From Octopus sinensis (Eukaryota): a DNA stretch of 64,000 nt. The notes under the pieces are model-generated. The model searched no databases and was not told the origin of the DNA. It was given only the letters and a program-made list of their open reading frames with translations. Below, in pieces: positions 14,638 through 37,521 of this stretch (position 1 is the first letter of the stretch; the number at the start of each line of letters is the position of its first letter). The translations under genes were made by a program, and so were the position numbers. The stretch lies in the NCBI RefSeq assembly GCF_006345805.1, contig NW_021833255.1, positions 1 to 64,000 on the forward strand. The letters are read 5' to 3'.

Positions 14638-14671
<34 letters not shown>

Positions 14672-14682
14672 CTGTCTCTGTC

Positions 14683-14719
<37 letters not shown>

Positions 14720-14881: not shown

Positions 14882-14922
<41 letters not shown>

Positions 14923-15039
14923 CATATAATATGAACAGGTGTATATAGCAAGAACAATTGTAAAAGACATTATTCTTTTTCCAATAATATCAATAATAGA
15001 TAAATGTCGAAAAGAGAGCTAATGATGATATCATTGATC

Positions 15040-15450
15040 TAATATTGATTTCTTACATTGATACAGGGTCACATATTTCTAGGAATTCGGAATCGATCGA
15101 GTCTTGTCTAAAACAAGGAATAGAGATAAAAATACTCTGCGAACTTTCTTTCCCAACGTTACCAATTCATTCCACCAACATTTGTTTCTGATGTAATTAT
15201 TCTTAAAACTGCATCTTCAGTTTCTGCCACATTTTGAATATAGGGAATCACTCAACGTGGAATAGAAAATAACATTCTAAGCAGCACCACAAATATATAC
15301 TGAGCGAATATGAAATATAATCAAACGTATCAAAGAATACGAACCGTTCTGCAAACACAGTTCTCTGGGAATTTACTACCATTCTCTATTTCCACCAAAC
15401 TGAACTTTTAGAAATCAAAGAACCAAATGGAATGGAACGCAGAAATTTCA
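15040..15450 (+). promoter_or_regulatory. Non-coding block conserved upstream of SLC17 paralogs (candidate promoter/5' UTR)
   Basis: Similar sequence at 22980-23390, 37860-38290 and, inverted, 49960-50135; always co-oriented with the gene. Confidence 0.4.
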
Positions 15451-16007
15451 GAAACCAGGAGAATCCCAAATAACGTTCAACGGCGTCTTATGTAAGAATA
15501 AGGCTTCATTTTTACAAACGACAGAGAAAGAATTGAAAGTGGTGCTATTAATTCTTGTATGTATAAAGAGTTCTTGGATCTGTTTTCTCCGCAATTTGCT
15601 GTTACGACCCAACACTTTCACAGTAACCTTCATTCTTGATTGCGTTCTTGCTTTGACGTAACGTTTTCTATTTGTAAATAAAGTACGGGCTAAACGTTTA
15701 TCGACACCTTTATAGGGATTGGTAAATGATGTCCATGTTTATCGATTATACATTGTAATAATACACTTAGAAATGTGACAGCACGAATGACATCTTCGTC
15801 CTAATTTCTGAAGACCCCATCACATTCAATTAAATATTTACTTTGTAAACAAAACAAACATCTTTTATAAAATGAACTCACGTTAAACAAACGAACAAAA
15901 CAATGAAATAAAAATTCTTTAACTGCAGCAGTTGTCCTTTAATCTGCGATAAAATATTTAACATTACATCACATATCAATATTATAAGAGTCAGTGGAAA
16001 GAACATA

Positions 16008-17005
16008 ATGATGTCTAAATTTCTCAGTAATATTAAGCGCTATTATTTGTGTCGATGGAGATTATGTTATGCGTGTACAGTTGCTTTTCTTCTGATGCAA
16101 ACATTAAGAGTTGATTTAAGCATGGCCTTTGTTTGCATGCTGAAAACACCTAATCGTATAAATGAGGAATTTAATTTTACCACAGACAACAAACAGTGTT
16201 CCGGTTTAGGCGATCATTCTGTAGACCGAAGTTACGAAGGAGAATTCGAGAATTCACTATTAGTGAAGAAGAATGTTCCTATTTAAAGAAAACTATAACA
16301 AGTGAAAAGTTAGTTAAAACAATACCTTGGAAAAAATGCTTTCCTCACCTGCAGTTTGGGCGATAATCGTCGGTTTCTTGCTTATTGTTGGACAGATTTA
16401 ACATTCCAGGTGTGTTACCACTCTATACGAAGGAAGCCTTAAACATTAAAATAACATCCAATGGTTTAATGTCGTCTGCCCCTGCCATTGGTCAAATCAT
16501 TGCTTTACCGTTGTGTGGAAGATTTGCAGATTTTATACTTTCAAAGAAATATCTCTCAACTCGTATCGTTCGAGTTTTATTCCAAAGCGTTTCTCTGATT
16601 GTTTCAGCATGTCTGTTGATTGCCATCGGATTCCTCAGATGTGACCAAACCATTCTAATAAGTATTCTTTTGATTCTAAGTGGTATAACTCTATCATTTA
16701 CCAGTGGCGGTGTTCTTGTCAACAACAGAGACATTGCTCCAAATTATGCTGGTATTATATTTGGAATTGGTAACACGTTTGCCGTATTGTTTGGAAGTTT
16801 TAGTTCCTTATCTACAAAAGCTTTAACCCCAAACGGTACACAACAAGAATGGCAGATCGTGTTCGCCTTATGTGCTGCTGTATGTGTAGCTGGTGCGATA
16901 TTATATGTGATATTGGCAAGAGGAGAAATCCAAGATTGGGCAATTTCAGAAGAATCCGGATCGTCTGTCAAACCAAGAGAGACAAAAATGAATGAAAAAA
17001 TTTAA
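16008..17005 (+). pseudogene. SLC17A5-like: SLC17 sialin-like copy 2 (about 470 bp internal deletion plus 1-nt deletions)
   Basis: Near-identical to copy 3 but jumps from GAATTCGAG (16250) to CACTATTAGT, missing copy-3 bases ~24214-24683; retains the C-terminal TMs and stop at 17005. Confidence 0.92.
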
Positions 17006-17534
17006 CCTTCAAGAAGAGTGAACGTAAATTTATATACAACAAATTTAAGAATTGTACTAACCATTTCAAAATATTATCTTCAGCAGTGAATAATTCAATG
17101 ATAAACGATATTTTGTAATCACCAATAATTTAATTTTATCAATATGTCAATATATGTGTTAATATGTAATTATTATTTTGGTAAATAAGGCCATTTGTAA
17201 ATATCACACTAGTGTCATGTCGTCGATCCTATATCGGTTTCTGTATCTCAGACCATACGTTTCTCAGTTCGGCACTTTTTCGGTTGTTGCTGCGCTTCTT
17301 CGACCTACTCCTGCAATTCATTCTCCTTCCGTCACTTGAGGGGTTTACAGATTGAGCAGACACAGATACATAAACAACACACAAACACACACACACAACA
17401 CACACACACAAACACACACACACACGCACACACACACACGCACACACACACACGCACACACACGCTTATATATTACAAATATTAGGTGTATACACACATA
17501 CATAAATTCCGCAAATTTATCATAAACTTTTCCT

Positions 17535-18060
17535 CGTTCTCGACACAATCAAAGGGATCTACTGCAACTGAAACCCGAGTGTCTTTTTGGTCAGCTAAAA
17601 GCAGTTTTTGAACAAACTTGGCAGACTCGCGTCTCATAGCTAAACCTTCACTGAACACCTGAGATGTTTTCTCAGTTCTGCTGGTTACGGTTCTCCCAGA
17701 ACGTTCGTCACCATTGACATCTTTTTCGACCATCTTGGAAACGTCTGAGCCACTCCTATATTTGTGTGCGGCTTATACACTCCTCTCCATATACTTTCTG
17801 CAACTTTGCGTTGGCCTCTGAGCAGGTATCACCATGACAACTTTCTCTGCCATGGTCAATACGACGATCACACGCTACACACCTTCCTTCCAAGCACTGC
17901 TGTAAACAGCAGAGACAAGCTAGAACATTAAAACTTAGTGCACATGCACAGCAAAGTTCACGGTCAACTTCTGCCAAGTGGCTTTACTCTGCGTGCTTTA
18001 GCGTCGTTACTATGGCAACATTCCTGATACTTATTGATCTTTATTTTAGATGACACCTTT
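17535..18060 (-). mobile_element. Mariner transposase N-terminal remnant
   Basis: KVYGEECISRTQI, DVNGDERSGRTVTSRTE, GLAMRRESAKFVQKLL are mariner HTH-region motifs; frameshifted. Confidence 0.8.
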
Positions 18061-18624
18061 AAAATCCAAGTTGTCTCAATTGCATTAATATATACATACA
18101 TACATATATATCCACACGCGCACACATATGCGCACACACATGCACACACAGACAATATTATTAAAATTAATTATAATACGTAGGAAAATTTATGTCAACA
18201 CAACATTTTCTAGATAATCCATATTGGTGAAATTTTAACTGAACATCTGAAAAAAATTTTAGCCGTTAAAAATAGTAACAAAAAGAAACGCGAAACCAAA
18301 TTTAAGTTTCGACGTCCATTCATTGAATCACGAGCAACGTTATTGAATAATTAATTTAGTTTATAAAAAAGAAGAAAAATACTATAGAAACCCCTAGGTT
18401 TTGGCAATTTGAAATCTACGTAAAAATAAAAATAAACAGCCTAACAGAGAAAGCGTGATGATTTTAAGTATACTTCACAATGTAAGGGCTGTATTAAGAG
18501 GTGCCCATTGCGAGCTAAATCGGAGGATAAGAGAAATTATAGAAGGAAAACAGCTAGGGAGTCAATACAAATTCCGAAACAAAGTTTAAAGCACACAACA
18601 AAATAAATAAATATACATATAAAT

Positions 18625-18965
18625 TGATATAAACTTAGATAAACTTAGATATGTTTCAACCAAAGATTGGTCCAGGCCATGTCTAACTTAATAGCACCAC
18701 CTGATTGGATTATCTGAATCCTGTTTAAGTCAAGTTTTGTTTATGGTCCATTCAAGTAGTGAGTTTTTGTTGGGTGAGTTGTATCCAGTTATGGGTGGCT
18801 TATCAGGTATTCCTTGAAGGAATCTATCTAGACTCCGTTTAAAGTTGATGGGATCCTTTTCCTCTTTGATCTCTGTATAAATAAGTGAATAAAGCTACAT
18901 GTAAAAGTTATGTTTCAAAACTATGCATCTTGTACGTTGGGTTCAGGTACCCCATGGAGAGGTGA
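18625..18965 (-). mobile_element. CR1 LINE 3' fragment
   Basis: Reverse complement matches the 37300-37521 tail (TTAAGTTAGACATGGCCTGG...CTAAGTTT). Confidence 0.8.
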
Positions 18966-19235
18966 TAAACATTGAGACAAAAATCCAAGGGTGTATGTTT
19001 TAAATTCTGCTTTGGAATTTATATTGATTGCCTTGATTGCCTTCTATAATTTCTCTTTTATATATATATTTCTTCCTCCGTCTTTCTTTCTCTTGGACTT
19101 TCCTCTATTTCTGAAGAAGAGCTTTTTTGTATCACACATCTGTCTGGATGTTTGCGTTGAGCAGCTGATTATGTATGTATGTATGTATGTATGTATGTAT
19201 GTATGTATGTATGTATGTATGTGTCTCTCTGCCTG

Positions 19236-19343
<108 letters not shown>

Positions 19344-19610
19344 CTTACCTATCTGTCTGCCAGTCTGTCTGTTTGTCTCACCACCCACCCTATTGTCCTT
19401 ATGTGGGTTTATATATCACGATAGAAACTTGTCAAAGAACGTATCAAAAAGGATTCTTATACACGGCCATGACGATGCATACCTATCATGGGAGGGAGCC
19501 CTAATTTAAAAGGAAGGCTTCAGGTAAGAAAAATTACATTCCCATATTTACATACATAATAATAATAATAATACTAGCTTATATATAATATATATATATA
19601 TATATATAAT

Positions 19611-19672
<62 letters not shown>

Positions 19673-19708
19673 GTACACACACGCACACACAACACACACA
19701 CCACACAC

Positions 19709-19754
<46 letters not shown>

Positions 19755-19756
<2 letters not shown>

Positions 19757-20322
19757 GCAGTGGCTCTCATGGCTTCTGATCTTAACTGACTGGAAGTGTT
19801 GATGTACATTGTTTTGTCTTGGTATAAAAGATGGGCTACAGCAAATATTCTGCTCAATACCACAGATTTGCTTGTCAGTTGTTTGACCGTAACCAGTTGA
19901 GCATGTCCCTTAGTGGCTGACGATATGTGCATCTCTGATCACGAGCAGAAGTAGTGGGGGAGCATCATAGCCATGTGTTGAGAAGGATTCGTTGGGGTTT
20001 GAATAATCACCTCTGGAAACATGGGTATTTCGTTCAACGTCCTTAAACAACCCTTATTCAGGGACCATTTGAGCAGGATGGGTTACTCGATCTGAAGAAA
20101 ATTCTAACTGCTCCACCTGCAAGGTCATGTGCTGTTTCTTGATATGAGATCACCATGCCGCGCACATATGGTTGTGATGCATGTGCCTGGTGTACCTTTA
20201 TCAGACGGGTAGTCATGATGGGTATACTGGGCTTCGTATATTTTCCCCAGTGTCACTTTGATGGCATGCTCTACTCGCTCACTCAACATAATAATAATAA
20301 TAATATAATAATAATAAATAAT

Positions 20323-20388
<66 letters not shown>

Positions 20389-20392
20389 AATA

Positions 20393-20471
<79 letters not shown>

Positions 20472-20500
20472 TAAAATATAATGATAATGATAATATAATA
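19755..20500 (+). mobile_element. Repeat insertion private to duplicate B, ending in an (AAT)n tail
   Basis: Absent from unit A; retroposon-like 3' end followed by long (AAT)n. Confidence 0.55.
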
Positions 20501-20818
20501 ATAATGGCGGTTACAATACCAGTGATCGTAGGAGCACTAGGAATGATCAAGAAGGGAACCGAAAATTATATGAGAATGATCCCTGGCTTACCATCCCTGC
20601 GAGAAGTGCAAAAGATTGTCTTAACTGGTACATCACACGTATTGAGAAGAGCATTGTCGATGTGAGACTGTTGCTGCTCATGTATTTTAATTAACTTAAA
20701 AAAAAAAAAAAATGAACGAACTATTGAGTTTGGTTTAATGGCCTACTATGAGTTCTTTTGCCTAGGAGTCGGAAGAGACTCGGCAAGAAATGGAAGCAAA
20801 TTTGAAAGAAGAAAAAAA

Positions 20819-20870
<52 letters not shown>

Positions 20871-21340
20871 TGTATACGAATCTCAATCTATGTATCCATG
20901 CATCACTTTGATTCCTTGATTCCACTTATTGCCACAAAGTTACCCCGAAGAATTAGTCCCTCGTCAAGACATCGGGTCTAAGTTCACTACAGAGTGTTTT
21001 CTATACCAACAATTTCTAGACATCATCTGTTGACTTATGGGTGTAAACTTATTTACACATACATATGCGTGCATGTGTGTATGTGCTTATATGTGTGTGT
21101 GTATATGGGTGTGTATGTGGGTGGGCGTATACATATTACTACACGCTAAAAATATATGAATAGTCGTTGTAGAAGAGGCCCCAACAGTTTAGTGGTTAGT
21201 ACAACTTTCATATGAACACGTCCATCACACGGTATGTACATTACTTTTGATTAAGCGTAAAAATCTTTTGGTTATACAATTTTTCAATGAATATTTGTTT
21301 CAGGCGATTATATTGCTACATACATTCAAACCTAAATACA

Positions 21341-21474
21341 TACATATATATTCATAAATTTATATAAGTATATATATATATATATATATTCATAAATTTA
21401 TATAAGTATATATATATATATTCATAAATTTATATAAGTATATATATATGTTCATAATTTATATAAGTATATAT

Positions 21475-21520
<46 letters not shown>

Positions 21521-21640
21521 TCATAAATTTATATAAGTATATATATATATATTCATAAATTTATATAAGTATATATACATGTTCATAAATTTATATAAGT
21601 ATATATATATATATTCATAAATTTATATAAGTATATATAT
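21341..21640. repeat. Minisatellite (TA)n-TTCATAAATTTATATAAG, about 8 copies
   Basis: Only 2 copies at the paralogous site 13610-13680. Confidence 0.85.
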
Positions 21641-22053
21641 ATATATATACATATAGTACAAAGTAAGATAGGGGTTATGAAAGTAACCCACTATGGGATA
21701 TCAGTTATCCAATATACTGCTGGTGAAGTACCCAAATACTAAATACATAAATGCTTATAATTGCAATGCAATTAATTCATTTATTTTATTGAATGGGTGA
21801 AGGTAAAAAATATTTTACCGTAAATTCATAATACAAATAAGAAAATGGAGGAACAAATTCATTTCGATCATCAACTTACGGATATTACGGATATTACAAT
21901 TTCACATCATTTATTAATTATACAAATGGGAACACGAATTTCGAACAAAATAATATACATCAATATGTAAAATAAAAATTTAAAAAAAAATAATGCAAAT
22001 AAACTGCTCCTTACAGCTATATATTCATAAATTTATATAAGTATAAATATATA

Positions 22054-22111
<58 letters not shown>

Positions 22112-22494
22112 TACGTAAAATATAGGCTAGTGTGTTTTCTTTTTAGAAATTTCACTACAGTCGCCTAGCAAGTTTAAAATGTCAATAGACAACATATTCT
22201 CAATATAAAATAGTTTACATTTAAACATAAGAGAAAACCACCGCCAGCAGACAGTTTTTACACGCTACAAGAAATAGTAGATGTATATATGCACATATAT
22301 ATATATATATTTGCATATATTTACCCTCAAGCCAGCAACCTGATGAGGTCGACGACCTGTAAAAATCCGAGGTAGATCGTACAATTGATCGTAGCTAAAA
22401 ATTAACAACTTAACCTATTTTTAATGTGTTGAGTACTTCTTCAATTTTAAATTGATTGCCTTTCGATAGATTTGCATTCAATGCATATGCAGCG

Positions 22495-22592
<98 letters not shown>

Positions 22593-22813
22593 CTCTATCT
22601 CTGTCTCTGTCTGTCTGTCTGTGTCTGTCTGTCTGTCTCTCTCTCTATATATATATGTAGGCGCAGGAGTGGGTGTGTGGTAAGACGCTTGCTTCCCAAC
22701 CACATGGTTCCGGGTTCAGTCTCACTGCGGGCACCTTGGGCAAGTATTTTGTACCGACCAGAATCTTATAAGTGAATTTGGTAGACGCAAACTGAAAGAA
22801 ACATTCACTATAT

Positions 22814-22861
<48 letters not shown>

Positions 22862-23970
22862 TTTCATATAAAATGAACAAGTTATATAGCAAGAACAATT
22901 GTAAAAGACATTATTCTTTTTCCAATAATATCAATAATAGATAAATGTCGAAAAGAGAGCTAATGATGATATCATTGATCTAATATTGATTTCTTACATT
23001 GATACAGGGTCACATATTTCTAGGAATTCGGAATCGATCGAGTCTTGTCTAAAACAAGGAATAGAGATAAAAATACTCTGCGAACTTTCTTTCCCAACGT
23101 TACCAATTCATTCCACCAACATTGTTTCTGATGTAATTATTCTTAAAACTGCATCTTCAGTTTCTGCCACATTTTGAATATAGGGAATCACTCAACGTGG
23201 AATAGAAAATAGCATTCTAAGCAGCACCACAAATATATACTGAGCGAATATGAAATATAATCAAACGTATCAAAGAATACGAACCGTTCTGCAAACACAG
23301 TTCTCTGGGAATTTACTACCATTCTCTATTTCCACCAAACTGAACTTTTAGAAATCAAAGAACCAATGGAATGGAACGCAGAAATTTCAGAAACCAGGAG
23401 AATCCCAATAACGTTCAACGGCGTCTTATGTAAGAATAAGGCTTCATTTTTACAAACGACAGAGAAAGAATTGAAAGTGGTGCTATTAATTCTTGTATGT
23501 ATAAAGAGTTCTTGGATCTGTTTTCTCCGCAATTTGCTGTTACGACCCAACACTTTCACAGTAACCTTCATTCTTGATTGCGTTCTTGCTTTGACGTAAC
23601 GTTTTCTATTTGTAAATAAAGTACGGGCTAAACATGTTACCAAATGATCATTACTGACGTTTATCGACACCTTTATAGTGATTGGTAAATGACGTCCATG
23701 TTTATCGATTATACATTGTAATAATACACTTAGAAATGTGACAGCACGAATGACATCTTCGTCCTAATTTCTGAAGACCCCATCACATTCAATTAAATAT
23801 TTACTTTGTAAACAAAACAAACATCTTTTATAAAATGAACTCACGTTAAACAGTTGAACAAAACAATGAAATAAAAATTCTTTAACTGCAGCAGTTGTCC
23901 TTTAATCTGCGATAAAATATTTAACATTACATCACATATCAATATTATAAGAGTCAGTGGAAATAACATA

Positions 23971-25170
23971 ATGATGTCTAAATTTCTCAGTAATATTAAG
24001 CGCTATTATTTGTGTCGATGGAGATTATGTTATGCGTGTACAGTTGCTTTTCTTCTGATGCAAACATTAAGAGTTGATTTAAGCATGGCCTTTGTTTGCA
24101 TGCTGAAAACACCTAATCGTATAAATGAGGAATTTAATTTTACCACAGACAACAAACAGTGTTCCGGTTTAGGCGATCATTCTGTAGACCGAAGTTACGA
24201 AGGAGAATTCGAGTGGAACGACTCCTTACAAGCCAACATGTTGGCAGGTTACTTCTATGGGTATATGGCAACAAATATTTTGGGTGGACTTTTAGCAGAC
24301 AAATATGGTGGAAAAAAAGTCCTAGGAATTTCGCTTTTATCAAAATCAATTTTAACCATTCTTCATCCAAGTTTATCTGGAGTTAGTGCTTATTTTACAC
24401 TTGCTCTAAGAATATTAACCGGTTTACTATCAGGGCCAGTGCCCCCTGCAATTCAATCATTATTTGAACGTTGGGGCCCTTCACAGGAGATAGGTTTATT
24501 GGTTGGTTCCGCATTTGCAGGTCAAATTCTAGGTAGTATTGTAGGTCTTTCATCTTCTGGTCTTCTTTGTGTTTATTGCTTTGATAATGGATGGGGTTCT
24601 ATATTCTATGTATTCGGTGGAATATCGTTGGTGTTTAGTTGTGTGTGGTTTTATGTGGTTTATGACAGCCCAGACGTCCATCCCACTATTAGTGAAGAAG
24701 AACGTTCCTATTTAAAGAAAACTATAACAAGTGAAAAGTTAGTTAAAACAATACCTTGGAAAGAAATGCTTTCCTCACCTGCAGTTTGGGCGATAATCGT
24801 CGGTTTCTTTGCTTATTGTTGGACAGATTTAACATTCCAGGTGTTGTTACCACTCTATACGAAGGAAGCCTTAAACATTAAAACAACATCCAATGGTTTA
24901 ATGTCGTCTGCCCCTGCCATTGGTCAAATCATTGCTTTACCGTTGTGTGGAAGATTTGCAGATTTTATACTTTCAAAGAAATATCTCTCAAATCGTATCG
25001 TTCGAGTTTTATTCCAAAGCGTTTCTCTGATTGTTTCAGCATGTCTGTTGATTGCCATCGGATTCCTCAGATGTGACCAAACCATTCTAATAAGTATTCT
25101 TTTGATTCTAAGTGGTATAACTCTATCATTTACCAGTGGTGGTGTTCTTGTCAACAACAGAGACATTGCT
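23971..25170 (+). pseudogene. SLC17A5-like: SLC17 sialin-like copy 3 (3'-truncated after NNRDIA; last two TMs missing)
   Basis: Open from 23971; identity with copy 2 ends at 25170; the frame reads into unrelated inserted sequence and stops at 25221. Confidence 0.88.
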
Positions 25171-26154
25171 GTTCTTATTTTAGTGCCGTTTGTCGGAAAT
25201 CTTTCGTCACATATCCTTTGATTTTTCAACGACTTTGCCATCCCAGGACAGAAGAAGACACGTAGGATGGACTGAACAGGACAGCAGGAGGATACGTGGG
25301 ATACAGAGTCGCTGAAGAGGTCACAAGGTTTGTGACGAAAGATTCAGAATAAGAGCAATAATAAATTTGAAATGAGGAACGAATATATAGTGCGTGTGTT
25401 TATATGGTTACATCCCGCCAATAAAAATGGCCGTCCTAAAATATAACAATGCCTATTTCAACACACGATTCCACATGTAAAATCATATATGTATTTATGT
25501 GTTTGCTAACTCCACAAAGTTTGCATCGGTTGTCACATTTTGCTGCTTTTCCTGCAATGCTGTCTCTTTTGTGCATCAGGTATTTGACTCTTAAAAGTGA
25601 GAGTTACTAACCTGTGGTTGGTACATGATAGATTGCTTTGATGAACGATGTTACTATTCTCTCGGAGCTTTCTTTTAACATATCCATGCATGCATATATG
25701 TATATATGTATGTATGTATGCATTGATAGCAATTTCGGAATGTGATGTCATTTTTGTTATGTTCGCCGCCATGGAAAAGTACATAAGACTGGCTGAATCT
25801 AGGTAATATGAGATATCAAAAATATTTGATATTTTCTGTATGTTTTGGGGCCTACTACTTTCAACAATCGTACTCTCGATGCATGACTGATTAACATATG
25901 ACTATTCTTTTCGTTGTCTGACTAATGTTCTTGAGTGTTATTTAGAGCATATAGAAAAGTCTGATGGAAATAATATAATCTGAGAAATTGTATCCTGAGT
26001 GACATTATATATAAATGTAAGAATGTGAAATAAAGTATCAGAATTTTTGACTCCGTTGTTTCATTTTTACTCTAACTTGAGAGTTAAACACATTTTGTAA
26101 CACTTAAAAATACAAGCAACTGATTTTAATGACTTCCAAATAACATGAGCACTT

Positions 26155-26466
26155 TTGTTTTTTTTTGTTTGTTCCTTCTCGAGCCATGCCTGGCTCATAA
26201 GGGCCGGTTTCCAGGTTTCCTTGGCGTATAGGTTCCCCACCTGGACGGGACGCCGGTCCGTCACAGGTGAGCTCCAAGATGCAGGAGGAAAGAGTGAGAG
26301 AAAGTTGTGGCGAAAGAGTCAGCAGAAGTTCGCCATACCTTCTGCCGGAGCCGCGTGGAGCTTTGGTGTTTCACTCATAAACACACACATCGTCCGGTCT
26401 GAGATTCGAACCCGCGATCCCTCGACCGCGAGTCCGCTGCTCTAACCACTAGGTCACGTGCCTCCA
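26155..26466 (-). mobile_element. tRNA-derived SINE sharing head and core with family C but a different 3' tail
   Basis: Shared GCAGCGGACTCGCGGTCG head and CCACAACTTTCTCTCACTC core. Confidence 0.8.
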
Positions 26467-26728
26467 CAATATGAACCTTTGATCATTGTTGATCATTGTT
26501 AACAGTTGAACATGTGTTCATCTGCAAGCGATTATTTATAAAAAAGGACAGCATCGCCGAATTCTTCCAGTCATATCAGTTGCAGAAATGTGGAGGTGTA
26601 TACTTTATGAAATAATATCACACGACGGGAAAATATTGCATTGTCACACAGTAAATTTATTTTGCTGTGTAATATGAGATACAAATTCTGTTTTATATAC
26701 ACAGAATTATATTTATTTCTTACCGCAT

Positions 26729-27374: not shown

Positions 27375-27715
27375 GCCTTCAGGAAAATGCTGGAAGGAAC
27401 TGTATCAAACTTTGTCATTGAAAGTTACACAGACACCAGAAGAGTGTGCATTGTGCCCAAAACCTCAACATTGTCATCAGGATGCAGGCCAGATACTACA
27501 ACAACTTGAAGAGCTCAGCACTTCAACATTCTCTCCCCAAAAGCCTGAGAGACGTACGTGAGGTGGATGTAGGTGACTTTAAAAGAGAACCGTATCTTTT
27601 TCCCTCAAGAGTTTCGGATAAATCTACCTCACGGCAGGAAACGCAGATGATGACAGCAACATCGAATTCCTTCATTCACTGAATACCACCTATCGGAGGA
27701 AATAAATTTCTCAGG
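27375..27715 (+). mobile_element. CR1-like LINE 3' fragment (different subfamily)
   Basis: Translates to LPKSLRDVREVDVGDFKRE...ATSNS, a CR1-type RT C-terminus. Confidence 0.6.
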
Positions 27716-28809: not shown

Positions 28810-28815
<6 letters not shown>

Positions 28816-28901
28816 AAAAGGTAATAAAATAAATTATTATTACCGGTGATCTAGTACTAGATCACCGGTAATAATAATTTATTTTATTACCTTTTTACTA
28901 T
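28810..28901. repeat. Perfect 92 bp palindrome without a loop
   Basis: Centre CTAGT|ACTAG at 28855/28856; follows (TA)n. Confidence 0.95.
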
Positions 28902-29238: not shown

Positions 29239-29344
<106 letters not shown>

Positions 29345-29460
29345 ATATGTGGGTATGTATATACTTGTATATATATATATATATATTATATATATATATA
29401 TATGTGTGTGTGTGTATATATATGTGGGTATGTATATACGTGTATATATATATATATATA

Positions 29461-29878
29461 TATACATAAACGGCAGTTTGTCTGTCTGTGTGTCTGTGTG
29501 TCTGTCAGGTTTGTACCCTCACCCTGACAACGGCTTTCAACCGATTCTGATGAAACTTAACACATACATAGCCCAATGTCATAATTCAAAACTAACGCAG
29601 CTAAAATTTTGAAAAGTTTCCCCAGTTCTGAAAAACATCGATAAATTCGACATGGGGTCGAGAATCTAAGCTTTTTATATGCAACACATTTTCTGTCTAG
29701 GGGACACAACTCGACCTTTTTATCGCCCAAAGGGACAGCTAGGAACATCGTATACACAGAAGTATTCGAGTGAAGAGAAGACATTGCAACCTATACATGC
29801 GCCTTCGTTCCCTAGAGGGAAAGGACTAGATTGGGATTAGTCGTTGCCTACTAGGGGCTCTTACATACCCGGGCAAAT
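29461..29878 (+). mobile_element. Non-autonomous Helitron/HINE-like element (related fragment ~28560-28770)
   Basis: 5' TATATACATAAA..GTCTGTCTG microsatellite head, CCGATTCTGATGAAACTT core, 3' CATACCCGGGCAA. Family call is from pattern recall. Confidence 0.45.
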
Positions 29879-30004
29879 AGAGATAAAACCACTATTAGGC
29901 AAATCAAACAATGAAAAACATAAGCCAATACGTAAAATTAATTAATTTATATTATTTTAAATATATATCAAAAGTATTAAAAGTTTAATAAAAGATAAAG
30001 AGTA

Positions 30005-30078
30005 AAACACTACGATCGTTTCATGGCTGTACAATTCGTAATAATTCGAGTTATAGTTACAGTCAATCTTCAGGTTAA
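30005..30078 (-). ncRNA. Hammerhead ribozyme motif (core intact, weak stem I)
   Basis: Minus strand CUGAAGA 30073-30067; stem II UGACUGUA/UACAGCCA; GAAAC-GAUC-GUA 30022-30011. Confidence 0.65.
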
Positions 30079-30639
30079 TTGAAATCTCTAAAATATAATC
30101 AGAAATATTTAAACAATATTTTTAAGATATGAAAAATATAATAATTTTACTTATAATAAACTCTATTATCAAACTAGAAACATAAAACTTAACAATTATG
30201 ATTAGATCAAAATCGACTATAATGTTAAATATTAATTTTAATTTATAAGGTAGGAAACCCACCAATAATCTAATATCGGTATTAATCTATATCTAATTAC
30301 ATAAATATTTAAAAATGACTATTATATATAAATTATCAATGAAAATATATAAATGTATATAAATATTATAATTAAGATCTAAAATAATCTCTATAAATAA
30401 ATATATATGCACCTATAATAAAAACCTAATAAATTAATTTTTCATATTTAAAGATGAAATAGCTAATTTCAAAATACAAATAAACAAACTTAAACGAATT
30501 TTCGGAAATTTATGTAAAATACTTATAGAAATAATCAATTCGTAGTAATATAGTATCGAATAAATACTATAAATACTATAAATATAATTATCAATGGGAA
30601 TAACTAGCGAATATCAATGTAAAAAAATAACTAAGTTAT

Positions 30640-30712
30640 GCTATTAAATTAGACATGGCCTGGACCAATCTTTAGTCGAAACATATCTAAGTTTATCTAA
30701 TTTAATTATAAA
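30640..30712 (+). mobile_element. Very short CR1 3' tail
   Basis: GCTATTAAATTAGACATGGCCTGGACCAATC...CTAAGTTTATCTAA, as at 37455-37521. Confidence 0.7.
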
Positions 30713-32167
30713 TTTAAAACTACAATTAATACTATTAAAACATGTATATACAAAAGCCTATCTTTATACACCTCGTATACTTGCTATCAAATAACAAATC
30801 TATCGCTAAGTAGTATCTTACGAATAAACTTAAATTTAATATCTAATAATATAGAAAATTACGATAATTAGATCATTACATAAATAACGATATTTACAAA
30901 AGGAAAATATTATTACACCAAAGACTTATACAATATTAAAATATACAATTTGAAGATCTTAAATATAAATAAATGCTTATCTTAGCGAGGTTTAGCAATG
31001 AACTAAAATTTTGAATCGGAAAACGTTTTTACAGCGTTTATAAGAATACTCGTGGAATTACGTTATTAGCAAAAAAAAGAATAAATTGTTGAAGAATTCA
31101 TTAAGCGTGAGGAACATACGCTTTATCAATGAGATTGTGAATGGGAAAATTAATGGTTTATCATTGTAAATAGAATGAAGTCACAAATAAAGAATAAAAT
31201 CTCTTTATACTATAATATTTATTAATAAAATAACTATGATAAATAATACTTAATACAAAATAAATTAAATGATTTAAATGATTAAAAACCACTAATTATT
31301 AAATATATTCTAAAAAACTTATATGATTAATAAATATATAAAAAAGTTTTTTTATATAGTAACCTCTCATCATACTATAAAGTCTTTCCCCTTGCTCTTA
31401 TAGTTATAAGCTAAAATTATTGATCATAACCAAATCTATAAATACTTATCAAAATTTGTAGCATAACTATACCTACGTATACATAAATATATAAAAAAAT
31501 ATATATACATATACATATATATACATATATATATACATATATATATACATACATATACATACACATATACACATACATACACACATACATACATATACAT
31601 ATATACACACATATATATACACACATACACATATGCACACACATACATACATATACATACATACAATACTCAATATATACACATACACCTATATACACAC
31701 ACACATAAATAAATGTATATACATATATATACACGCACATCAACATATACACATATATACATACACACACTACCTCATATATCGTATAATAAATACGTAT
31801 ATAAATGTCTATATTCATACTACAATACAAAATAGAGGTAAACATTAAGTTTAATCTAAATAATTAATCTACTAATCTATACTTCTATATTAAATAAAAT
31901 AGATTAAATAAACAACTAAATAAGTCTATTTCAAATATAAAGAGATTACATACAAATAGATTAATATAACAAAATTATAATTTAACGAAATTATAACTGA
32001 AATATAACAAAATATATAATATAAATAAAATTGTAACTTACCAGACTCTATATTCAATAAACCATTAAATATTTATTATATATATCTAATGTAGGATAAC
32101 ATTTTTTCGAAAAAAAATTTATCAATGGCCAGCATATTAAAAAATACCTTTAAAGGTTAAATTATAA

Positions 32168-32227
32168 ACAACTTATAAATAAGGGCAAACGAAAAAACTT
32201 TTTCGTTTGCCCTTATTTATAAGTTGT
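32168..32227. repeat. 60 bp palindrome (29 bp arms, 2-nt loop)
   Basis: ACAACTTATAAATAAGGGCAAACGAAAAA-AC-TTTTTCGTTTGCCCTTATTTATAAGTTGT. Confidence 0.93.
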
Positions 32228-32740
32228 ATATATACATACATACATTATGATTGCTCATAATCCACACTGATTGCTGAAGTATAAAGACGTGTCTTTACTC
32301 CTCTCCGCGCCGGTCAGCAGCAAGCTTCACAGCTACAAACGAAATTGACCATCACATATATTCTTGTATATTTGAAACCACGCGTCTTCCCAACTCGTGA
32401 GTAGACTTTTCTTTAACTACAAATTATGCTCATAAATTTCAAACGACCAAATAAACAAAACCACACACTTCTACGAGAGAGTATTTATTTATATATACAC
32501 TTCGTCAACACCTTCTGATAACTAAAGGATCAACCACACATTAAAAATTAGAAAAAGAGGGGAAAAAAAAGAAAAGAAAAGAAAGATAAAATAACTGCAA
32601 GCTCATAATTCAAATACAAATTTCTCAGTATTACATCAAACATTCTGTACAATCTATTCTACATACGTCTCCTTAAAAAAAATAAGATAAAATAAAATAA
32701 AAAATAAAAGTAAATAAAAATAATCAACAAAACAAACGAA

Positions 32741-33150
32741 CAGGAGTGGCTGTGTGGTAAGTAGGTTGCTAACCAACCACATGGTTCCGGGTTCAGTCCC
32801 ACTGCGTGGCATCTTGGGCAAGTGTCTTCTGCTATAGCCCCGGGCCGACCAATGCCTTGTGAGTGGATTTGGTAGACAGAAACTGAAAGAAGCCCGTCGT
32901 ATATATGTATATATATATATATATGTGTGTGTATGTGTGTGTGTTTGTGTGTGTGTTTGTCCCCCTAGCATTGCTTGACAACCGATGCTGGTGTGTTTAC
33001 GTCCCCGTCACTTAGCGGTTCGGCAAAAAGAGACCGATAGAATAAGTACTGGGCTTACAAAGAATAAGTCCCGGGGTCGATTTGCTCGACTAAAGGCGGT
33101 GCTCCAGCATGGCCGCAGTCAAATGACTGAAACAAGTAAAAGAGTAAAGA
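32741..33150 (+). mobile_element. SINE family A with internal microsatellite; other copies or halves at ~1398-1570, 2799-2945(-), 4833-5025, 14737-14885, 22659-22805, 41787-42205, 42556-43000, 53880-54490, 54940-55610, 57066-57330
   Basis: Recurrent GGAGTGGCTGTGTGGTAAG head, CTTGGGCAAGTGTCTTC core and CAGCATGGCCGCAGTCAAATGACTGAAAC tail. Confidence 0.9.
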
Positions 33151-33189
33151 GAGTAACAAAATAAAATTTAATAAAACATATCCACCAGA

Positions 33190-36100
33190 ATGGCTAGCCA
33201 CCAAAAATCCAACAAAAACTGGTCTGATAATGAAATCGACGTTTTATCAGCACATGGCGTGGCCTTACCCAAACTGAGAGAATAGGAGCTTCGTGTCTGA
33301 ACGAAATTGCTAAACGAACAGTTCACCATTTGCAAACTCGATCTGAACAGCAGATACAAAATAAGTTAAAACAAATCGAAGTTGCTTTTAAATTAATAAA
33401 TAAACACTTCGATAAACTGAGATGTGTTTTCTCTTCGAACGCATCTCCGGCACAACAACAACAACAACAACCTCAACAACAAACAGCGGCAACAACAAGA
33501 GTATGAACCACTCCTTGATTCTTCTACAATGGCCGATTTGCTAAACGAAACGATTGACCCCCCCAGTCATCAGGGTCACACAGCAGGAAGCACCACCCCT
33601 TCCTTTCACTGCCCCAGCAGCTCAATCATCATCATTGTCAACATCTTCTCCCCTGCTTACAACTACTAGTACTACACCCACTATCTATCCACAAACATCT
33701 TTGTCTACCGCTATATCATGGAATCCACCTCCTCAATCATCATCACTGTCATCATCTCTTCTGCCTACTACTACTACTACAACTACTACTACTAATGCTA
33801 TCTCAAGGAGTCTACCTCCTACAGGTCACAAAGGTCGCCAAAACCTCAACAAACTATCATCTACAACTCATACACGCACCTACACACCCACTCGAAACCC
33901 CATCATTTGCCGATATTCTCTTCGCCATAAATTATGCACTGATAGCGACTGCAAATTCACCCATTTACCGGGAACAAAACGCTATATCCCCACAAACTAC
34001 AACAGCTACCACCATAATGCATACTCTATTACAACACCACCACAACCACCAATAACTAAAAGAAGGAATCCTCAAATCTGCCGCTATTCCCAGCGAGACA
34101 GATTGTGTTTGCACAGAGATTACCCCTTTACCCATCTCCCGGGGACTCGTCGGACAATTGATTATAAAAGTAAAAATAAAAACAAAAAAACCTACGACTC
34201 ATATAACAATAACCACAACCACAGTCACATACAGTTCCCTACAATAACCATATAATAATAACCACAACCACAGTCACCTACAGTTCCCTAGACAGGAAAC
34301 TTCTTTCTCTTTTTTAGCTATAATTAATCTAGCAAAAGAACTGGAAAAAAAACATCCGAGCTATCACCCATCACCATTCACCACTATCACCCCACTGCAC
34401 ATGCCATTAAAAAAGCAATCAAATAAACAAAACACCAAAACAATTAAAAATATCCACTCTCGCCTCAACATTTTTGCTTAATGCCCAAGGCATCAGCCCT
34501 TCCACCAATACTCAAAAATGGAAGATAAAATTCCTGGAGGACTGGGTCGATACCCATCCAAACCACATCCCTTTCTTCGTCCTCACTGAAACCCATCTTA
34601 GTAACCTCCACTTGGAAGCCGAGGTGAAAGTTAAAAATTTCAAAGCCATTCGTGCTGATCGTGCTGGCAGAAGAAAGGGTGGGACTGCCATTTATGTTCA
34701 TGATTCTTTCTCAACAGAGGTTATGAACATATTTTCCAATGGATACTGCGAAGCAGTCGCTGTATTAAGTCAACCCAACAACTTAACAGTAGTTGGGCTC
34801 TACAGACCACCCCAAACGCCCCTACCATGCTTCAAGGAATGCCTCAATAACATAAAGTGTTTCATTCAGCAGTATCAATCTGACAACATCTTAATGATGG
34901 GGGACTTCAATCTCCCTGGAGTTGACTGGTCTATAAACAGTCTGCCGCTAGGTTCTTCTGCCTCAACCCCTGACAGGGAGGCAGTGGAATCGCTTCATGA
35001 TTTCATGGATGATTTTTTCCTGTCCCAACTGGTGCTCGAACCAACGGGATGTCACAAAAACGTCCTAGACTTAATTTTCAGCAATCACACTGACACTATC
35101 CATAATATTGTAGTGGAGAAAACCCTACTCTCCGACCATGACATGGTTCTCTGTGATCTGAGATTTCACCGGCCAAAATGCAAAACAAATGTCATCCCTC
35201 CTGTCCATCCATTTGACACTATGGATTTCCACAACGCAAACTGGGAAGCGATCAGTAATGATCTTGCACAAGTCGATTGGTCCTTCACGCACACATACAC
35301 ACCCACTAACATAAAAAAAAAACATCAATAAGTCCTGGCAGTCATTTGTAGACACCATTACGAACATATGTGCAAAACACACCCCATTAAGATCTGCAAA
35401 CAAATCTAAGTGCAGAATCCCCAGAAATAGAAAAAACTCTCATCAGGAAAATTAAAAGAATCAACAAAAAAATCAACAAGCTAAAATACTGCCAACAGCA
35501 ACACACCAACCTGACTGCCATCACGTCACTAGAGATTAAAAAAACATAACCTCTAAAACAACATGATGTCTATCATCAATAGTCAGAGAAGAGCTGAAGA
35601 GGCCTGGGCCATTGAGAAGATCAAACTTAATCCCAAAGTGTCCTTCTCATTTGCAAAACAACACAAAGTTACTGGCTCTACTGTTGGCCCTCTGATTGAT
35701 GAAAATCGTACTCTTCAAGACAATGCCAAAACCAGGGAGAGATGTTGCAAAAACAATACTGCTCTGTTTTCAGCAATCCTGATATGGCTGATCTGGGCTG
35801 TATCACTGATGTTACTCCCCAATACACTTTATCGGACATAACCTTTGGCGCTCCTGATGTCTTAGCAGCAATAAAGGAAATGAAGCATAATTCAGCAGTA
35901 GGTCCCGATAGGTTCCCTGCTTGTGTCTTGAAGATGTGTCAACACCAACTTGCACCTCCTCTAGCCAATCTGTGGCGGAACTCACTGGATGCTGGATATA
36001 TACCAGAAAACCTTCTATCCCAGTCTGTTGTCCCAGTTTTCAAAAAAGGAAACAAATCTCTTGCCGTGAATTACCGTCCAATCTCACTCACCTCTCATAT

Positions 36101-37521
36101 CATTAAGGTATTTGAGAGAGTGGTGAGATCGCGTATGACTCACTTCCTTGAGAGTCATAATATGCTGAACTCCAACCAGTATGGATTCCGTAATGGAAGG
36201 GATTGCCTGACACAGCTACTGCATCACTTCGATGACATTTTGAGAGCCTTGGGAGAGGGTTCCAACACTGATGTTATCTACCTTGATTTCAGCAAGGCCT
36301 TTGACAGGGTTGATCATAAGATCCTTTTGAGAAAGCTGTCCAATATTAGTGTCACTGGAAAGCTGCTGCAGTGGATCAAGTGCTTCCTGTCTAACAGAAC
36401 CCAACATGTTGTAGTCGAAGGAGTCAAATCCAGCCCAGCCAAAGTCAGCAGTGGTGTCCCACAAGGCACTGTGTTGGGCCCACTTCTCTTCATCATCTAC
36501 ATTAATGACATCACTGACATCATCAAACACAGTAACATCAGAATTTTTGCTGATGATTCCAAGCTCCAGAAGGTCATCAATGTCGTGGATGACCGGATAA
36601 ACCTTCAGTCAGACCTACTGGCTGTTGTCCAATGGGCGGAAAAGAACAACATGTTGCTAAACGAAGACAAATTCGAATTGATCCACTTTGGAAGGGAGGA
36701 CGCTCTGAAACTCCCATACTCCCTTCCTTCTGGTGAAACTCTCATGGCGTCTAACAACAGCAGAGACTTGGGAGTAACTGTGGACAACAACATAAGCTGG
36801 GCTACACATATAAGCAGCAAAGTTGACATGGCCCGCAGAATGTGTTCCTGGATTCTCAGAACCTTCCAGTCGAGAGATTCCCACACCATTATCCTTCTCT
36901 TCTCCACCTTTTCCCGACCTCACCTTGAATACTGCTGTCCACTGTGGTCTCCCTACACGAAACGGAATATTATGAAAGTTGAAGCTCCCCAAAGGTCAAT
37001 CACGAAAAAGATAGATGGCATGTCAGACCTTGACTACTGGGATCGACTGGAAAAGCTGAAACTGTATTCACTCCAACGACGCCGTGAACGCTACATTATC
37101 TGTATGACGTGGAAAATATTCCATCAGCACTGTCCAAATGATATTAGTATCACCTTCAAAATACATCCAAGACTTGGACCCCGTGCCATCCGTCCACAAC
37201 AAAAATCTCAATCGCATCTCATAACAACATTGTGGCACAATTATTTCACCGCAATTGGACCCGCCTTCTTCAACATTACACTAAGACACGTCAAAACAGA
37301 AACTGACCACACAAAATTCAAGAAGATTTTGGACAAATTCCTTCAAACAGTCCCGGACAAACTACCCACACCCGGATATGTCTCCGCAAACAATAACTCT
37401 CTGCTCGAATGGGCCTTGGTGCCCAAATCCTGAATTGAAAGACTTCACCAGGTGGCGCTATTAAGTTAGACATGGCCTGGGCCAATACTGGGCAAAACCT
37501 TTCTAAGTTATTCTAAGTTAT
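33190..37521 (+). mobile_element. Near full-length CR1-clade LINE (ORF1 with CCCH fingers; APE endonuclease + RT), frameshifted
   Basis: APE ORF 34474-35331 (LTETHL, MGDFN, SDHDMV); RT ORF 35742-37433 (YLDFSKAFD, GVPQGTVLGP, FADD, LYSLQRRRER); short tandem CTAAGTTAT 3' tail. The 5' UTR may extend to ~32240. Confidence 0.92.

What the first reader, a model, noticed from the sequence alone, without database searches (positions are those of the whole stretch)
25171..25356. SLC17 copy 3 is cut off exactly at an inverted, split hammerhead element
Seen: gene identity stops at 25170. The next bases (25171-25211) are an inverted copy of 25331-25356. The right part reads GUCG-CUGAAGA-G-GUCACAA GGU UUGUGAC-GAAAGAUUC. 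The left part, on the minus strand, supplies the missing GUGAC-GAAAGAU-UUC-CGAC, whose CGAC pairs with GUCG. The halves reconstruct one hammerhead. Inference: a ribozyme element with an inverted end created or marks the breakpoint that truncated the gene and ended the duplication, linking these elements to cluster remodelling.
Basis: partly seen in the sequence, partly recalled or inferred. Interest (0 to 1): 0.72.

Follow-up and report, generated by a model that had tools for sequence, protein, structure and literature searches.

The report
Deletion ending in decayed hammerhead palindrome
One copy of an octopus transporter gene lost its tail through an ordinary 728-base deletion whose far end lies inside an old, decayed palindromic remnant that looks like it came from a hammerhead-ribozyme mobile element. 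That element was already there and did not cut the gene.

Summary
The window is Octopus sinensis scaffold VCDQ01004784.1. The sequence facts hold:
- SLC17 copy 3 stops matching its paralogues at 25170.
- An inverted repeat follows.
- 25308-25345 carries hammerhead boxes around a perfect 7-bp helix II (expected 0.005 per window by chance).

The causal reading fails. In the sister species O. vulgaris the orthologous gene (P0066) is intact. The same hammerhead-like sequence sits about 460 bp beyond its stop codon.

O. sinensis simply lacks 728 bp lying between two ATTGCT hexamers, one in the gene and one in the element. This is a microhomology deletion, not an insertion.

The element is not one split ribozyme. 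It is the remnant of a 374-bp imperfect palindrome. Each arm holds its own degenerate hammerhead-like copy:
- The plus-strand copy has lost its cleavage site and the 3' strand of helix I.
- The minus-strand copy has a mutated core (UUGAAAA) and a broken helix II.

The arms differ more from each other (JC 0.23-0.31) than O. vulgaris differs from O. bimaculoides (0.095). The palindrome is therefore older than that species split.

The design matches published Penelope-like-element minimal hammerheads and their head-to-head insertion architecture. However, no Rfam hit, no Penelope-like reading frame and no second family copy were found.

Verdict: an ordinary deletion next to a probable retroelement relic. 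Interest is low.

The parts
23971..25170 (+). SLC17 (slc-17.2-like) copy 3, an intronless coding sequence. It retains 400 codons and has lost 88 codons plus the stop.
   Evidence: ORF. Paralogue alignments. 88% identical to the full-length O. bimaculoides P0003 (488 aa) and 100% identical to the NCBI model P0002/XP_029656179.1.
25165..25170 (.). ATTGCT, the single retained copy of the 6-nt microhomology at the 728-bp deletion junction.
   Evidence: O. vulgaris carries ATTGCT at L005 11108-11113 (in the gene) and at 11836-11841 (in the left palindrome arm). O. sinensis has one copy joining the two flanks.
25171..25448 (.). Remnant of the imperfect palindrome: left-arm remnant 25171-25237, centre ~25238-25303, right arm 25304-25448.
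   Evidence: The full palindrome in O. vulgaris is L005 11761-12134, with arms of 149 and 159 nt that are 75-82% complementary. Its DNA hairpin is -83 kcal/mol, z=-12.6. The window remnant gives z=-3.9.
25192..25233 (-). Minus-strand hammerhead-like copy. Helix I is intact (GUCG/CGAC), as are GAAA and the UC cleavage site. The core box is UUGAAAA (C3U and G8A) and helix II is degraded.
   Evidence: Alignment of both arms in both species and sequence reading.
25308..25345 (+). Plus-strand hammerhead-like copy. It keeps the 5' strand of helix I (GUCG), CUGAAGA, a bulged G, a perfect 7-bp helix II with a GGU loop, and GAAA. It has no usable cleavage site and no 3' strand of helix I.
   Evidence: In O. 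vulgaris the continuation is GATTC-AAGAC rather than GATTTC-CGAC.
25345..25346 (.). Site of a second, 14-bp deletion specific to O. sinensis (AAGACGATGGACAC is present in O. vulgaris, and O. bimaculoides has the near-identical AAGACAATGGACAC).
   Evidence: Alignments.
25346..25448 (+). Outer right arm. It is orthologous in all three octopus species.
   Evidence: Window 25345-25505 matches O. bimaculoides L001 14999-15158 at 93% and matches O. vulgaris L005.
25187..25188 (+). Cryptic splice donor (CC|GT) inside the left arm, used by NCBI model XP_029656179.1. Six element-derived codons (VLILVP) are annotated as coding, and the terminal exon is 27384-27509.
   Evidence: P0002 sequence, locus table and peptide mapping.
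16011..17005 (+). SLC17 copy 2, the tandem partner that still carries the 3' end missing from copy 3. It has its own 470-bp internal deletion.

Best explanation
**Origin of the palindrome (inferred).** Long before O. vulgaris/sinensis and O. bimaculoides diverged, a short, 5'-truncated insertion of a hammerhead-bearing retroelement landed downstream of this SLC17 gene. It was most likely a Penelope-like element or a non-autonomous passenger of one. It inserted in the head-to-head form expected when both DNA strands are cleaved and both prime reverse transcription. This gave a ~374-bp palindrome. Each arm carried a minimal type-I hammerhead about 115 nt from its outer (3') end.

**Decay (shown).** Both copies have since degraded. 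One lost its cleavage site and the 3' strand of helix I. The other has a mutated core and a broken helix II. Neither extant copy has every element of the motif, so neither is expected to self-cleave (expectation, not tested).

**Truncation (shown by comparison with two other species).** In the O. sinensis lineage or haplotype, a 728-bp deletion occurred between two ATTGCT hexamers. It removed the last 88 codons of the gene, its 3' flank, a microsatellite and the outer 75-81 nt of the left palindrome arm. This fused the truncated gene directly to the remaining palindrome.

**Possible role of the palindrome (inferred, plausible).** Hairpin formation may have promoted this deletion through slippage or end-joining at microhomology. 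The palindrome has also been hit by a 14-bp deletion in O. sinensis and by loss of the left arm plus the hammerhead in O. bimaculoides.
For: **Deletion.**
- Window 20395-25170 matches L005 6389-11113 and window 25165-34000 matches L005 11836-20720, both at 96%.
- The junction sequences show ATTGCT at both ends in O. vulgaris and once in O. sinensis.
- The gene is intact in O. vulgaris (P0066) and in O. bimaculoides (P0003).
- The deleted DNA is not relocated elsewhere in the window.

**Palindrome.**

**Two hammerhead-like copies.**

**Motif is non-random.** One hit against 0.005 expected.

**Match to published Penelope-like-element minimal hammerheads (PMC4209133).**
- A G10.1-C11.1 pair.
- A helix II of 7-8 bp and a helix I of 4-5 bp.
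- Almost no helix III, with a palindromic 15.2-16.2 stretch. Here AGAUUU can pair with itself.
- A natural U3-A8 core variant is reported in that paper.
- That paper also reports 'dual min-HHRs ~100-700 bp apart on opposite strands'. Here the two copies are ~75-115 bp apart.

**Insertion architecture.**
- Inverted 5'-truncated copies that form inverted repeats, hammerheads near the 3' ends, and a bias toward microsatellite or (TA)n targets are described in PMC8557442.
- A Penelope-like-element protein cleaves and extends both DNA strands in vitro (PMC11167929).
- Penelope-like elements are one of the six transposable-element orders annotated in O. vulgaris, with an old expansion (PMC13282606).

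**Age.** Arm-to-arm JC distance is 0.23-0.31, against 0.095 between O. vulgaris and O. bimaculoides. The left arm is equally distant from both species' right arms.
Against: - No Rfam hammerhead model scores either copy at E<=10.
- No single extant copy passes a complete minimal-hammerhead descriptor.
- No Penelope-like RT/GIY-YIG reading frame lies within 10 kb.
- No other copy of the element was seen in ~150 kb of octopus DNA (window, L001, L003-L005). Family membership is therefore unproven.
- O. bimaculoides has only the outer right arm, so a separate loss must be assumed there.
- The arms run ~115 nt past the cleavage site, which is longer than the 30-40-bp 'tails' described for Penelope-like elements.
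- The deletion is known from one assembly only, and no reads could be examined.
- The link between the palindrome and the deletion is circumstantial.
Confidence: 0.65

Rival explanations
1. A hammerhead-bearing element with an inverted end inserted into, or rearranged at, the gene. This cut off its 3' end and terminated the tandem duplication.
For: The gene homology ends exactly where element sequence begins. O. bimaculoides has ~3.8 kb between the two flanks that O. sinensis lacks.
Against: - O. vulgaris has the same element, base for base, downstream of an intact gene.
- The O. sinensis state is explained by a single deletion with 6-nt microhomology.
- The deletion also removed part of the element itself.
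- Homology between array units extends 447 bp beyond the breakpoint in O. vulgaris.
Confidence: 0.03
2. The hammerhead resemblance is fortuitous. The structure would be a local inverted duplication (fold-back repair or replication template switch) or a MITE/foldback DNA element unrelated to ribozymes. The deletion story is unchanged.
For: - No Rfam hit.
- No complete motif in one copy.
- No family copies and no Penelope-like reading frame.
- The whole 374 bp, centre included, is self-complementary, as expected for a fold-back.
- A possible 3-bp ATG repeat flanks the palindrome.
Against: - The half-motif is expected 0.005 times per window.
- It also shows features that were not part of the search: a bulged nucleotide, G10.1-C11.1, a 7-bp helix II, a self-pairing AGAUUU, and helix I present in the other arm.
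- The core differences between the arms are the C3U/G8A pair, which is a known natural covariation.
Confidence: 0.25
3. The junction at 25170 is an assembly artefact of the unplaced 77.7-kb O. sinensis contig, and the real genome resembles O. vulgaris.
For: - The evidence comes from a single assembly of an unplaced scaffold.
- The same scaffold shows two further deletions relative to O. vulgaris: 14 bp at 25345 and 470 bp in copy 2.
- Palindromes and tandem repeats are hard to assemble (PMC8557442).
Against: - The junction is clean, with microhomology typical of real deletions.
- Both flanks are collinear with O. vulgaris at 96% over many kb.
- NCBI built a gene model across it, although that does not prove read support.
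Confidence: 0.1
4. Both arms are decayed fragments of SLC17 3' coding sequence, one of them inverted, rather than a mobile element.
For: The reverse complement of the left arm aligns with the region encoding STKALTPNGTKEE. This includes a 14-nt exact match to copy 6 at 60172-60185.
Against: The shuffle test gives only p~0.03 over 12 targets for the left arm. The homologous right arm gives no signal at all (169 of 300 shuffles score as well).
Confidence: 0.04

Closest known systems
Minimal type-I hammerhead motifs of metazoan Penelope-like elements (Cervera & de la Pena 2014, PMC4209133)
   Same: It shares the CUGANGA and GAAA boxes, an unpaired nucleotide after position 9, G10.1-C11.1, a long (7-bp) helix II and a short (4-bp) helix I. 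It also has almost no helix III and a self-complementary 15.x/16.x stretch that would allow dimer formation. The published motifs also occur as pairs on opposite strands ~100 bp apart, and a U3-A8 core variant is reported.
   Different: No extant copy has all parts together. No flanking Penelope-like reading frame or pLTR was found, no family of copies was recovered, and activity is untested.
Penelope-like-element insertion architecture: an inverted 5'-truncated copy abutting a direct copy, with 'tails' (PMC8557442), and cleavage and extension of both strands by a Penelope-like-element protein (PMC11167929)
   Same: It is a head-to-head palindrome with the presumed 3' ends pointing outward and the hammerheads inward. 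It lies next to a (CA)n(TA)n tract.
   Different: Both copies are extremely short (~187 bp) and nearly symmetric. The sequence beyond the cleavage site is ~115 nt rather than 30-40 nt.
Microhomology-mediated deletion, and deletions stimulated by long inverted repeats (replication slippage or alternative end-joining; general knowledge, not read here)
   Same: The deletion is clean, lies between 6-nt direct repeats, and has one endpoint inside a palindrome arm. The same palindrome has been hit by independent deletions in other lineages.
   Different: There is no direct evidence that the hairpin caused the event. One deletion at one locus cannot show stimulation.
Animal non-LTR retrozymes (tandem hammerhead repeats; PMC7229834 and bioRxiv 10.64898/2026.07.22.740005, abstracts only)
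   Same: They involve a type-I hammerhead in a short non-coding unit that is thought to derive from Penelope-like-element pLTRs.
   Different: Retrozymes are direct tandem repeats. Here the two copies are inverted, and no tandem unit exists.

Membership tests
Hammerhead ribozyme as modelled in Rfam (Hammerhead_1, _3, _II, HH9, HH10) | Covariance-model score at or above the gathering threshold | tested here: not met
   No hammerhead match at gathering thresholds on the window. None at E<=10 on the whole window among the 150 rows listed out of 199. None on window 25100-25450 or on O. vulgaris L005 11740-12160.
PLE-type minimal hammerhead (min-HHR) | CUGANGA and GAAA boxes enclosing a helix II of 6-8 bp with G10.1-C11.1 | tested here: met
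   Plus-strand copy 25312-25340: 7 perfect pairs, a GGU loop and a G-C closing pair. The minus-strand copy fails this feature (UUGAAAA core, 4 bp plus a mismatch).
PLE-type minimal hammerhead (min-HHR) | [quoted passage not shown] | tested here: met
   G at 25319. The O. vulgaris left copy also has G. The feature is described in PMC4209133.
PLE-type minimal hammerhead (min-HHR) | U-H cleavage site followed by the 3' strand of a 4-5-bp helix I, in the same copy as the intact core | tested here: not met
   The strict descriptor finds no complete motif in the window, L001 or L002; only the in-silico chimera passes. The right copy reads GATTC then AGAAT (O. sinensis) or AAGAC (O. vulgaris). Only the core-mutated left copy has UC-CGAC.
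PLE-type minimal hammerhead (min-HHR) | Palindromic 15.2-16.2 stretch that allows a dimeric helix III | tested here: met
   By inspection, A-GAUU-U in the left copy pairs with itself (A-U, G-U, A-U, U-A, U-G, U-A).
PLE-type minimal hammerhead (min-HHR) | Belongs to a multi-copy genomic family with covarying helices, with some copies inside pLTRs flanking an RT-GIY-YIG reading frame | not testable with these tools
   No eukaryotic genome collection is searchable here. There were 0 further copies in ~150 kb of octopus DNA. Two metagenome scans gave only unrelated chance matches.
PLE-type minimal hammerhead (min-HHR) | Self-cleavage as a dimer or with protein help | not testable with these tools
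   This needs in vitro transcription assays.
PLE head-to-head (inverted 5'-truncated) insertion | Two copies in inverted orientation joined at their 5' ends, with the same 3' terminus at both outer ends | tested here: met
   O. vulgaris palindrome 11761-12134, collinear in three blocks (I3, I1, I2). Reverse-complement self-alignment gives E=4e-30.
PLE head-to-head (inverted 5'-truncated) insertion | Sequence identity to a PLE with an RT and GIY-YIG endonuclease | tested here: inconclusive
   No such reading frame lies near the locus. An RT-like ORF at 62644-63201 has no Pfam hit and only five short unnamed relatives.
Non-LTR retrozyme | Direct tandem repeats of a hammerhead-containing unit | tested here: not met
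   No direct repeat of the unit was found in the window. The two copies are inverted.
Microhomology-mediated deletion | The undeleted state is present in the sister species and outgroup. A short direct repeat lies at both ends and one copy is retained at the junction | tested here: met
   (ATTGCT, 728 bp). The gene is intact in O. vulgaris and O. bimaculoides.

The most novel reading that the evidence does not exclude
The palindromic pair of hammerhead relics acts as a recurrent fragile site that remodels the end of this SLC17 array. Three independent lesions map to it: the 728-bp and 14-bp deletions in O. sinensis, and the loss of the left arm plus the hammerhead in O. bimaculoides. The boundary of O. 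bimaculoides homology falls within 1 nt of the predicted ribozyme cleavage site. If this were general, head-to-head Penelope-like-element insertions would be a systematic source of gene-truncating deletions in cephalopod gene clusters.
Probability: 0.2. Interest if true: 0.4.

Novelty: new member of a known kind. Interest (0 to 1): 0.15.

Why it matters
It matters mainly as a correction. A breakpoint that abuts a mobile-element-like sequence looked like an insertion-driven truncation. One sister-species comparison shows the element was there first, and the gene was clipped by an ordinary deletion.

There are two practical consequences:
- The NCBI protein XP_029656179.1 is a truncated transporter. 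Its last 47 residues come from element sequence (6 codons) and a downstream exon (41), joined through a cryptic donor in the element. It should not be treated as a functional SLC17 paralogue.
- Both members of this subfamily on the O. sinensis scaffold carry disabling deletions that their O. vulgaris counterparts lack.

The hammerhead relic itself adds one probable cephalopod example to a well-described class.

Tried and rejected
- **Rfam.** I searched at gathering thresholds and at E<=10 on the window, on the 351-nt core and on the O. vulgaris palindrome. No hammerhead family was reported.
- **Other copies in the window.** Motif and mismatch searches found none. The weak hit at 26306 belongs to a tRNA-derived SINE.
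- **Exact look-ups of window reading frames.** Copy 3 and copy 5 are not on record.
- **Metagenome scans with hammerhead patterns.** The first gave 0 hits. The second gave 3 unrelated chance matches with no helix I.
- **Right copy ending at the ribozyme cleavage site.** I first read GAAAGATTC followed by flank as the end of a processed-RNA copy. I rejected this because O. vulgaris shows that junction is a 14-bp deletion specific to O. sinensis.
- **Arms as decayed SLC17 coding sequence.** Marginal for one arm and absent for the other.
- **Reaching an octopus Penelope-like element through the RT-like ORF at 62644-63201.** There was no Pfam hit, only five short unnamed relatives, and no structural relative.
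- **Supplementary hammerhead alignments of PMC4209133.** They are not held as text.

Full report
**Source and setting.** The window is bases 1-64000 of Octopus sinensis unplaced scaffold VCDQ01004784.1 (77,717 bp). Window and record coordinates coincide. It holds six intronless slc-17.2-like (SLC17) genes:
- copy 1, 8763-10165 (+)
- copy 2, 16011-17005 (+)
- copy 3, 23971-25170 (+)
- copy 4, 39146-40623 (+)
- copy 5, 47433-48935 (-)
- copy 6, 60010-61497 (-)

Copies 2 and 3 lie in a tandem duplication, 11980-16738 against 19142-25170, at 90-99% identity.

- Every paralogue aligns to copy 3 up to ...GACATTGCT at 25170 and not beyond.
- The following sequence contains an inverted repeat. Its arms are 25198-25221 / 25321-25344 (24 nt, 83%, with the exact 14-mer TGTGACGAAAGATT) and 25165-25179 / 25348-25362.
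- The right part reads GTCG CTGAAGA G GTCACAA GGT TTGTGAC GAAA GATTC.
- A descriptor for 'CUGANGA, optional bulge, perfect helix II, GAAA' hits once in the window. It hits 0.005 times per dinucleotide shuffle.
- Joining the right part to the reverse complement of the left part gives a sequence that passes a complete minimal-hammerhead descriptor. No natural sequence in the window or in the fetched loci passes it.
- Rfam's hammerhead models report nothing, even at E<=10 on short queries.

**The decisive evidence is comparative.** The protein cluster of the NCBI model for copy 3 (P0002) contains four consecutive O. vulgaris proteins. The last of these, P0066, has a complete C-terminus. Its locus, L005 (chromosome OX597837.1), is collinear with the window on both sides of the breakpoint. 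Window 20395-25170 matches L005 6389-11113, and window 25165-34000 matches L005 11836-20720, each at 96%.

O. vulgaris therefore carries 728 bp that O. sinensis lacks. This segment holds the last 88 codons and the stop, ~180 bp of 3' flank, an orphan 109-bp duplicate of the gene end, a (CA)n(TA)n tract, and ~75 nt of further sequence.

ATTGCT occurs at both ends of this segment in O. vulgaris (11108-11113 and 11836-11841). It occurs once at the O. sinensis junction. The 'hammerhead' sequence is present, almost base for base, in O. vulgaris about 460 bp beyond the intact stop codon. O. bimaculoides also has a single intact gene, P0003. The truncation is thus a derived microhomology deletion, and the element pre-dates it. 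The missing gene end is not relocated anywhere else in the window.

**What the element is.** In O. vulgaris the inverted repeat is far longer than in the window. Three collinear blocks make arms of 149 and 159 nt (11761-11909 and 11976-12134) at 75-82% complementarity. The whole 374 bp aligns to its own reverse complement (E=4e-30). As single-stranded DNA it folds into a hairpin of -83 kcal/mol, z=-12.6. The O. sinensis deletion removed the outer part of the left arm, and the remnant gives z=-3.9.

Aligning both arms in both species shows that each arm carries its own hammerhead-like copy.
- The plus-strand copy has an intact CUGAAGA box, a bulged G, a 7-bp helix II and GAAA. It continues GATTC-AAGAC, so it has no U-H site followed by CGAC. 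O. sinensis has additionally lost 14 bp at that point.
- The minus-strand copy has GUCG...GAAA-GAUUUC-CGAC, so helix I and the cleavage site are intact. Its box is UUGAAAA and its helix II is degraded.

The structure is therefore not one split ribozyme. It is two decayed copies on opposite strands. Neither has every element of the motif, so neither is expected to cleave.

**Age.** The arms differ by JC 0.23 over the hammerhead part and 0.31 over the outer part. The outer right arm differs by only 0.095 between O. vulgaris and O. bimaculoides. The left arm is equally distant from both species' right arms. The inverted duplication therefore pre-dates that species split.

O. bimaculoides now keeps only the outer right arm. 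Its homology begins at AAGAC, within 1 nt of the predicted cleavage position. It must have lost the rest. I cannot explain why that boundary sits where it does.

**Comparison with known systems.** The motif matches the published description of metazoan Penelope-like-element minimal hammerheads point by point (PMC4209133):
- a helix II of 7-8 bp and a helix I of 4-5 bp
- a G10.1-C11.1 pair
- virtually no helix III, with a self-pairing 15.2-16.2 stretch
- a reported natural U3-A8 core variant
- reported pairs of motifs ~100-700 bp apart on opposite strands

Penelope-like-element insertions typically carry an inverted 5'-truncated copy that forms inverted repeats. Their hammerheads lie near the 3' ends, and they favour microsatellite targets (PMC8557442). 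One Penelope-like-element protein cleaves and extends both DNA strands in vitro (PMC11167929), which would give exactly such head-to-head structures. These elements are an annotated repeat order in O. vulgaris with an old expansion (PMC13282606).

My best reading is an ancient, very short, double-primed insertion of a Penelope-like or Penelope-mobilised element. The limits are plain. There is no Rfam score, no complete copy, no Penelope-like reading frame nearby, and no second family member in ~150 kb of octopus DNA. No eukaryotic genome collection could be searched. I give the retroelement origin about 0.6 and the deletion about 0.9.

**Mechanism of the truncation.**
- Shown: a clean 728-bp loss between 6-nt direct repeats, with one endpoint inside a palindrome arm.
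- Inferred: slippage or microhomology-mediated end joining, possibly favoured by hairpin formation. The same palindrome has been hit three times in three lineages, which fits that idea but does not prove it.

The motif's identity and the exactness of the boundary stand. The causal claims do not. The element did not create the break. The apparent end of the duplication at 25170 is produced by the deletion, because homology between O. vulgaris units continues 447 bp further, to L005 ~11560.

**Other points.**
- NCBI model XP_029656179.1 reads six codons of element sequence, then splices from a GT at 25188 to a terminal exon at 27384-27509.
- Copy 2 has its own 470-bp deletion with an AATT filler. 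Its O. vulgaris counterpart lacks this deletion.
- A 14-nt identity between the left arm and the antisense strand of copy 6 is most likely chance.

Noticed in passing
L004 1797-21200 and L005 1646-11380 (O. vulgaris) versus window 11980-25170: O. vulgaris has four consecutive annotated genes of this subfamily (P0067, P0064, P0065, P0066). The O. sinensis scaffold has only two (copies 2 and 3). This is either a copy-number difference or a collapsed assembly.
   Followed up: partly
window 16250-16255 (copy 2): Copy 2 lacks ~470 bp of coding sequence that is present in copy 3 (24214-24683) and in the O. vulgaris counterpart (L005 1775-2245). The junction carries an AATT filler that duplicates the adjacent GAATTC. 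Both O. sinensis members of the subfamily are therefore disabled by separate deletions.
   Followed up: partly
L005 11562-11670: An orphan 109-bp duplicate of the gene's last codons and stop, followed by (CA)n(TA)n, lies between the last gene copy's 3' flank and the palindrome in O. vulgaris. This is the real distal junction of the tandem array. It was removed in O. sinensis by the 728-bp deletion.
   Followed up: partly
L001 14986-15101 (O. bimaculoides): Homology to the right palindrome arm starts at AAGAC, within 1 nt of the position equivalent to the hammerhead cleavage site. No trace of the hammerhead or the left arm lies upstream. Whether this boundary is coincidence is unexplained.
   Followed up: partly
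window 25179-25192 and 60172-60185: There is an exact 14-nt match between the left arm and the antisense strand of the copy 6 sequence encoding PNGTK. The extended alignment is only marginally better than shuffles (p~0.03), and the right arm shows nothing. It is probably chance.
   Followed up: yes
window 25187-25188 and 27384-27509: NCBI model XP_029656179.1 extends the truncated gene through six element-derived codons and a cryptic GT donor to a 41-residue terminal exon 2.2 kb downstream. Transcript support is unknown.
   Followed up: partly
window 1488-1571, 4947-5030, 33065-33148, 42123-42206, 42907-42990, 54403-54486, 55533-55616, 57247-57330: An eight-copy SINE-like family (...GGTGCTCCAGCATGGCCGCAGTCAAATGACTGAAAC...), usually preceded by a TGTCCCCCTAGCATTGCTTGACAACCGATGCTGG segment. 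It is not hammerhead-related by inspection.
   Followed up: no
window 26282-26467, 6364-6543, 7754-7929: These look like copies of a tRNA-derived SINE, judged by eye rather than by a tRNA scan. One contains TGTGGCGAAAGAGT, which mimics the hammerhead 14-mer at 2 mismatches.
   Followed up: yes
window 33554-37433: A LINE with endonuclease (Exo_endo_phos) and RVT_1 reading frames. It lies within the block (window 29306-42743) that is collinear with O. vulgaris L003 at 96.6%, so it was inserted before the two species diverged.
   Followed up: partly
window 28810-28901 and 10407-10607: A perfect 92-bp palindrome at 28810-28901, and a ~200-bp imperfect one at 10407-10607. The latter draws spurious miRNA-precursor Rfam hits below threshold.
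   Followed up: no
window 62644-63201: A 185-aa reading frame containing KDHK...RLI and FDIASFYPSI. From memory it resembles the N-terminal motifs of a reverse transcriptase. It has no Pfam hit and only five short unnamed relatives, so its identity is unresolved.
   Followed up: partly
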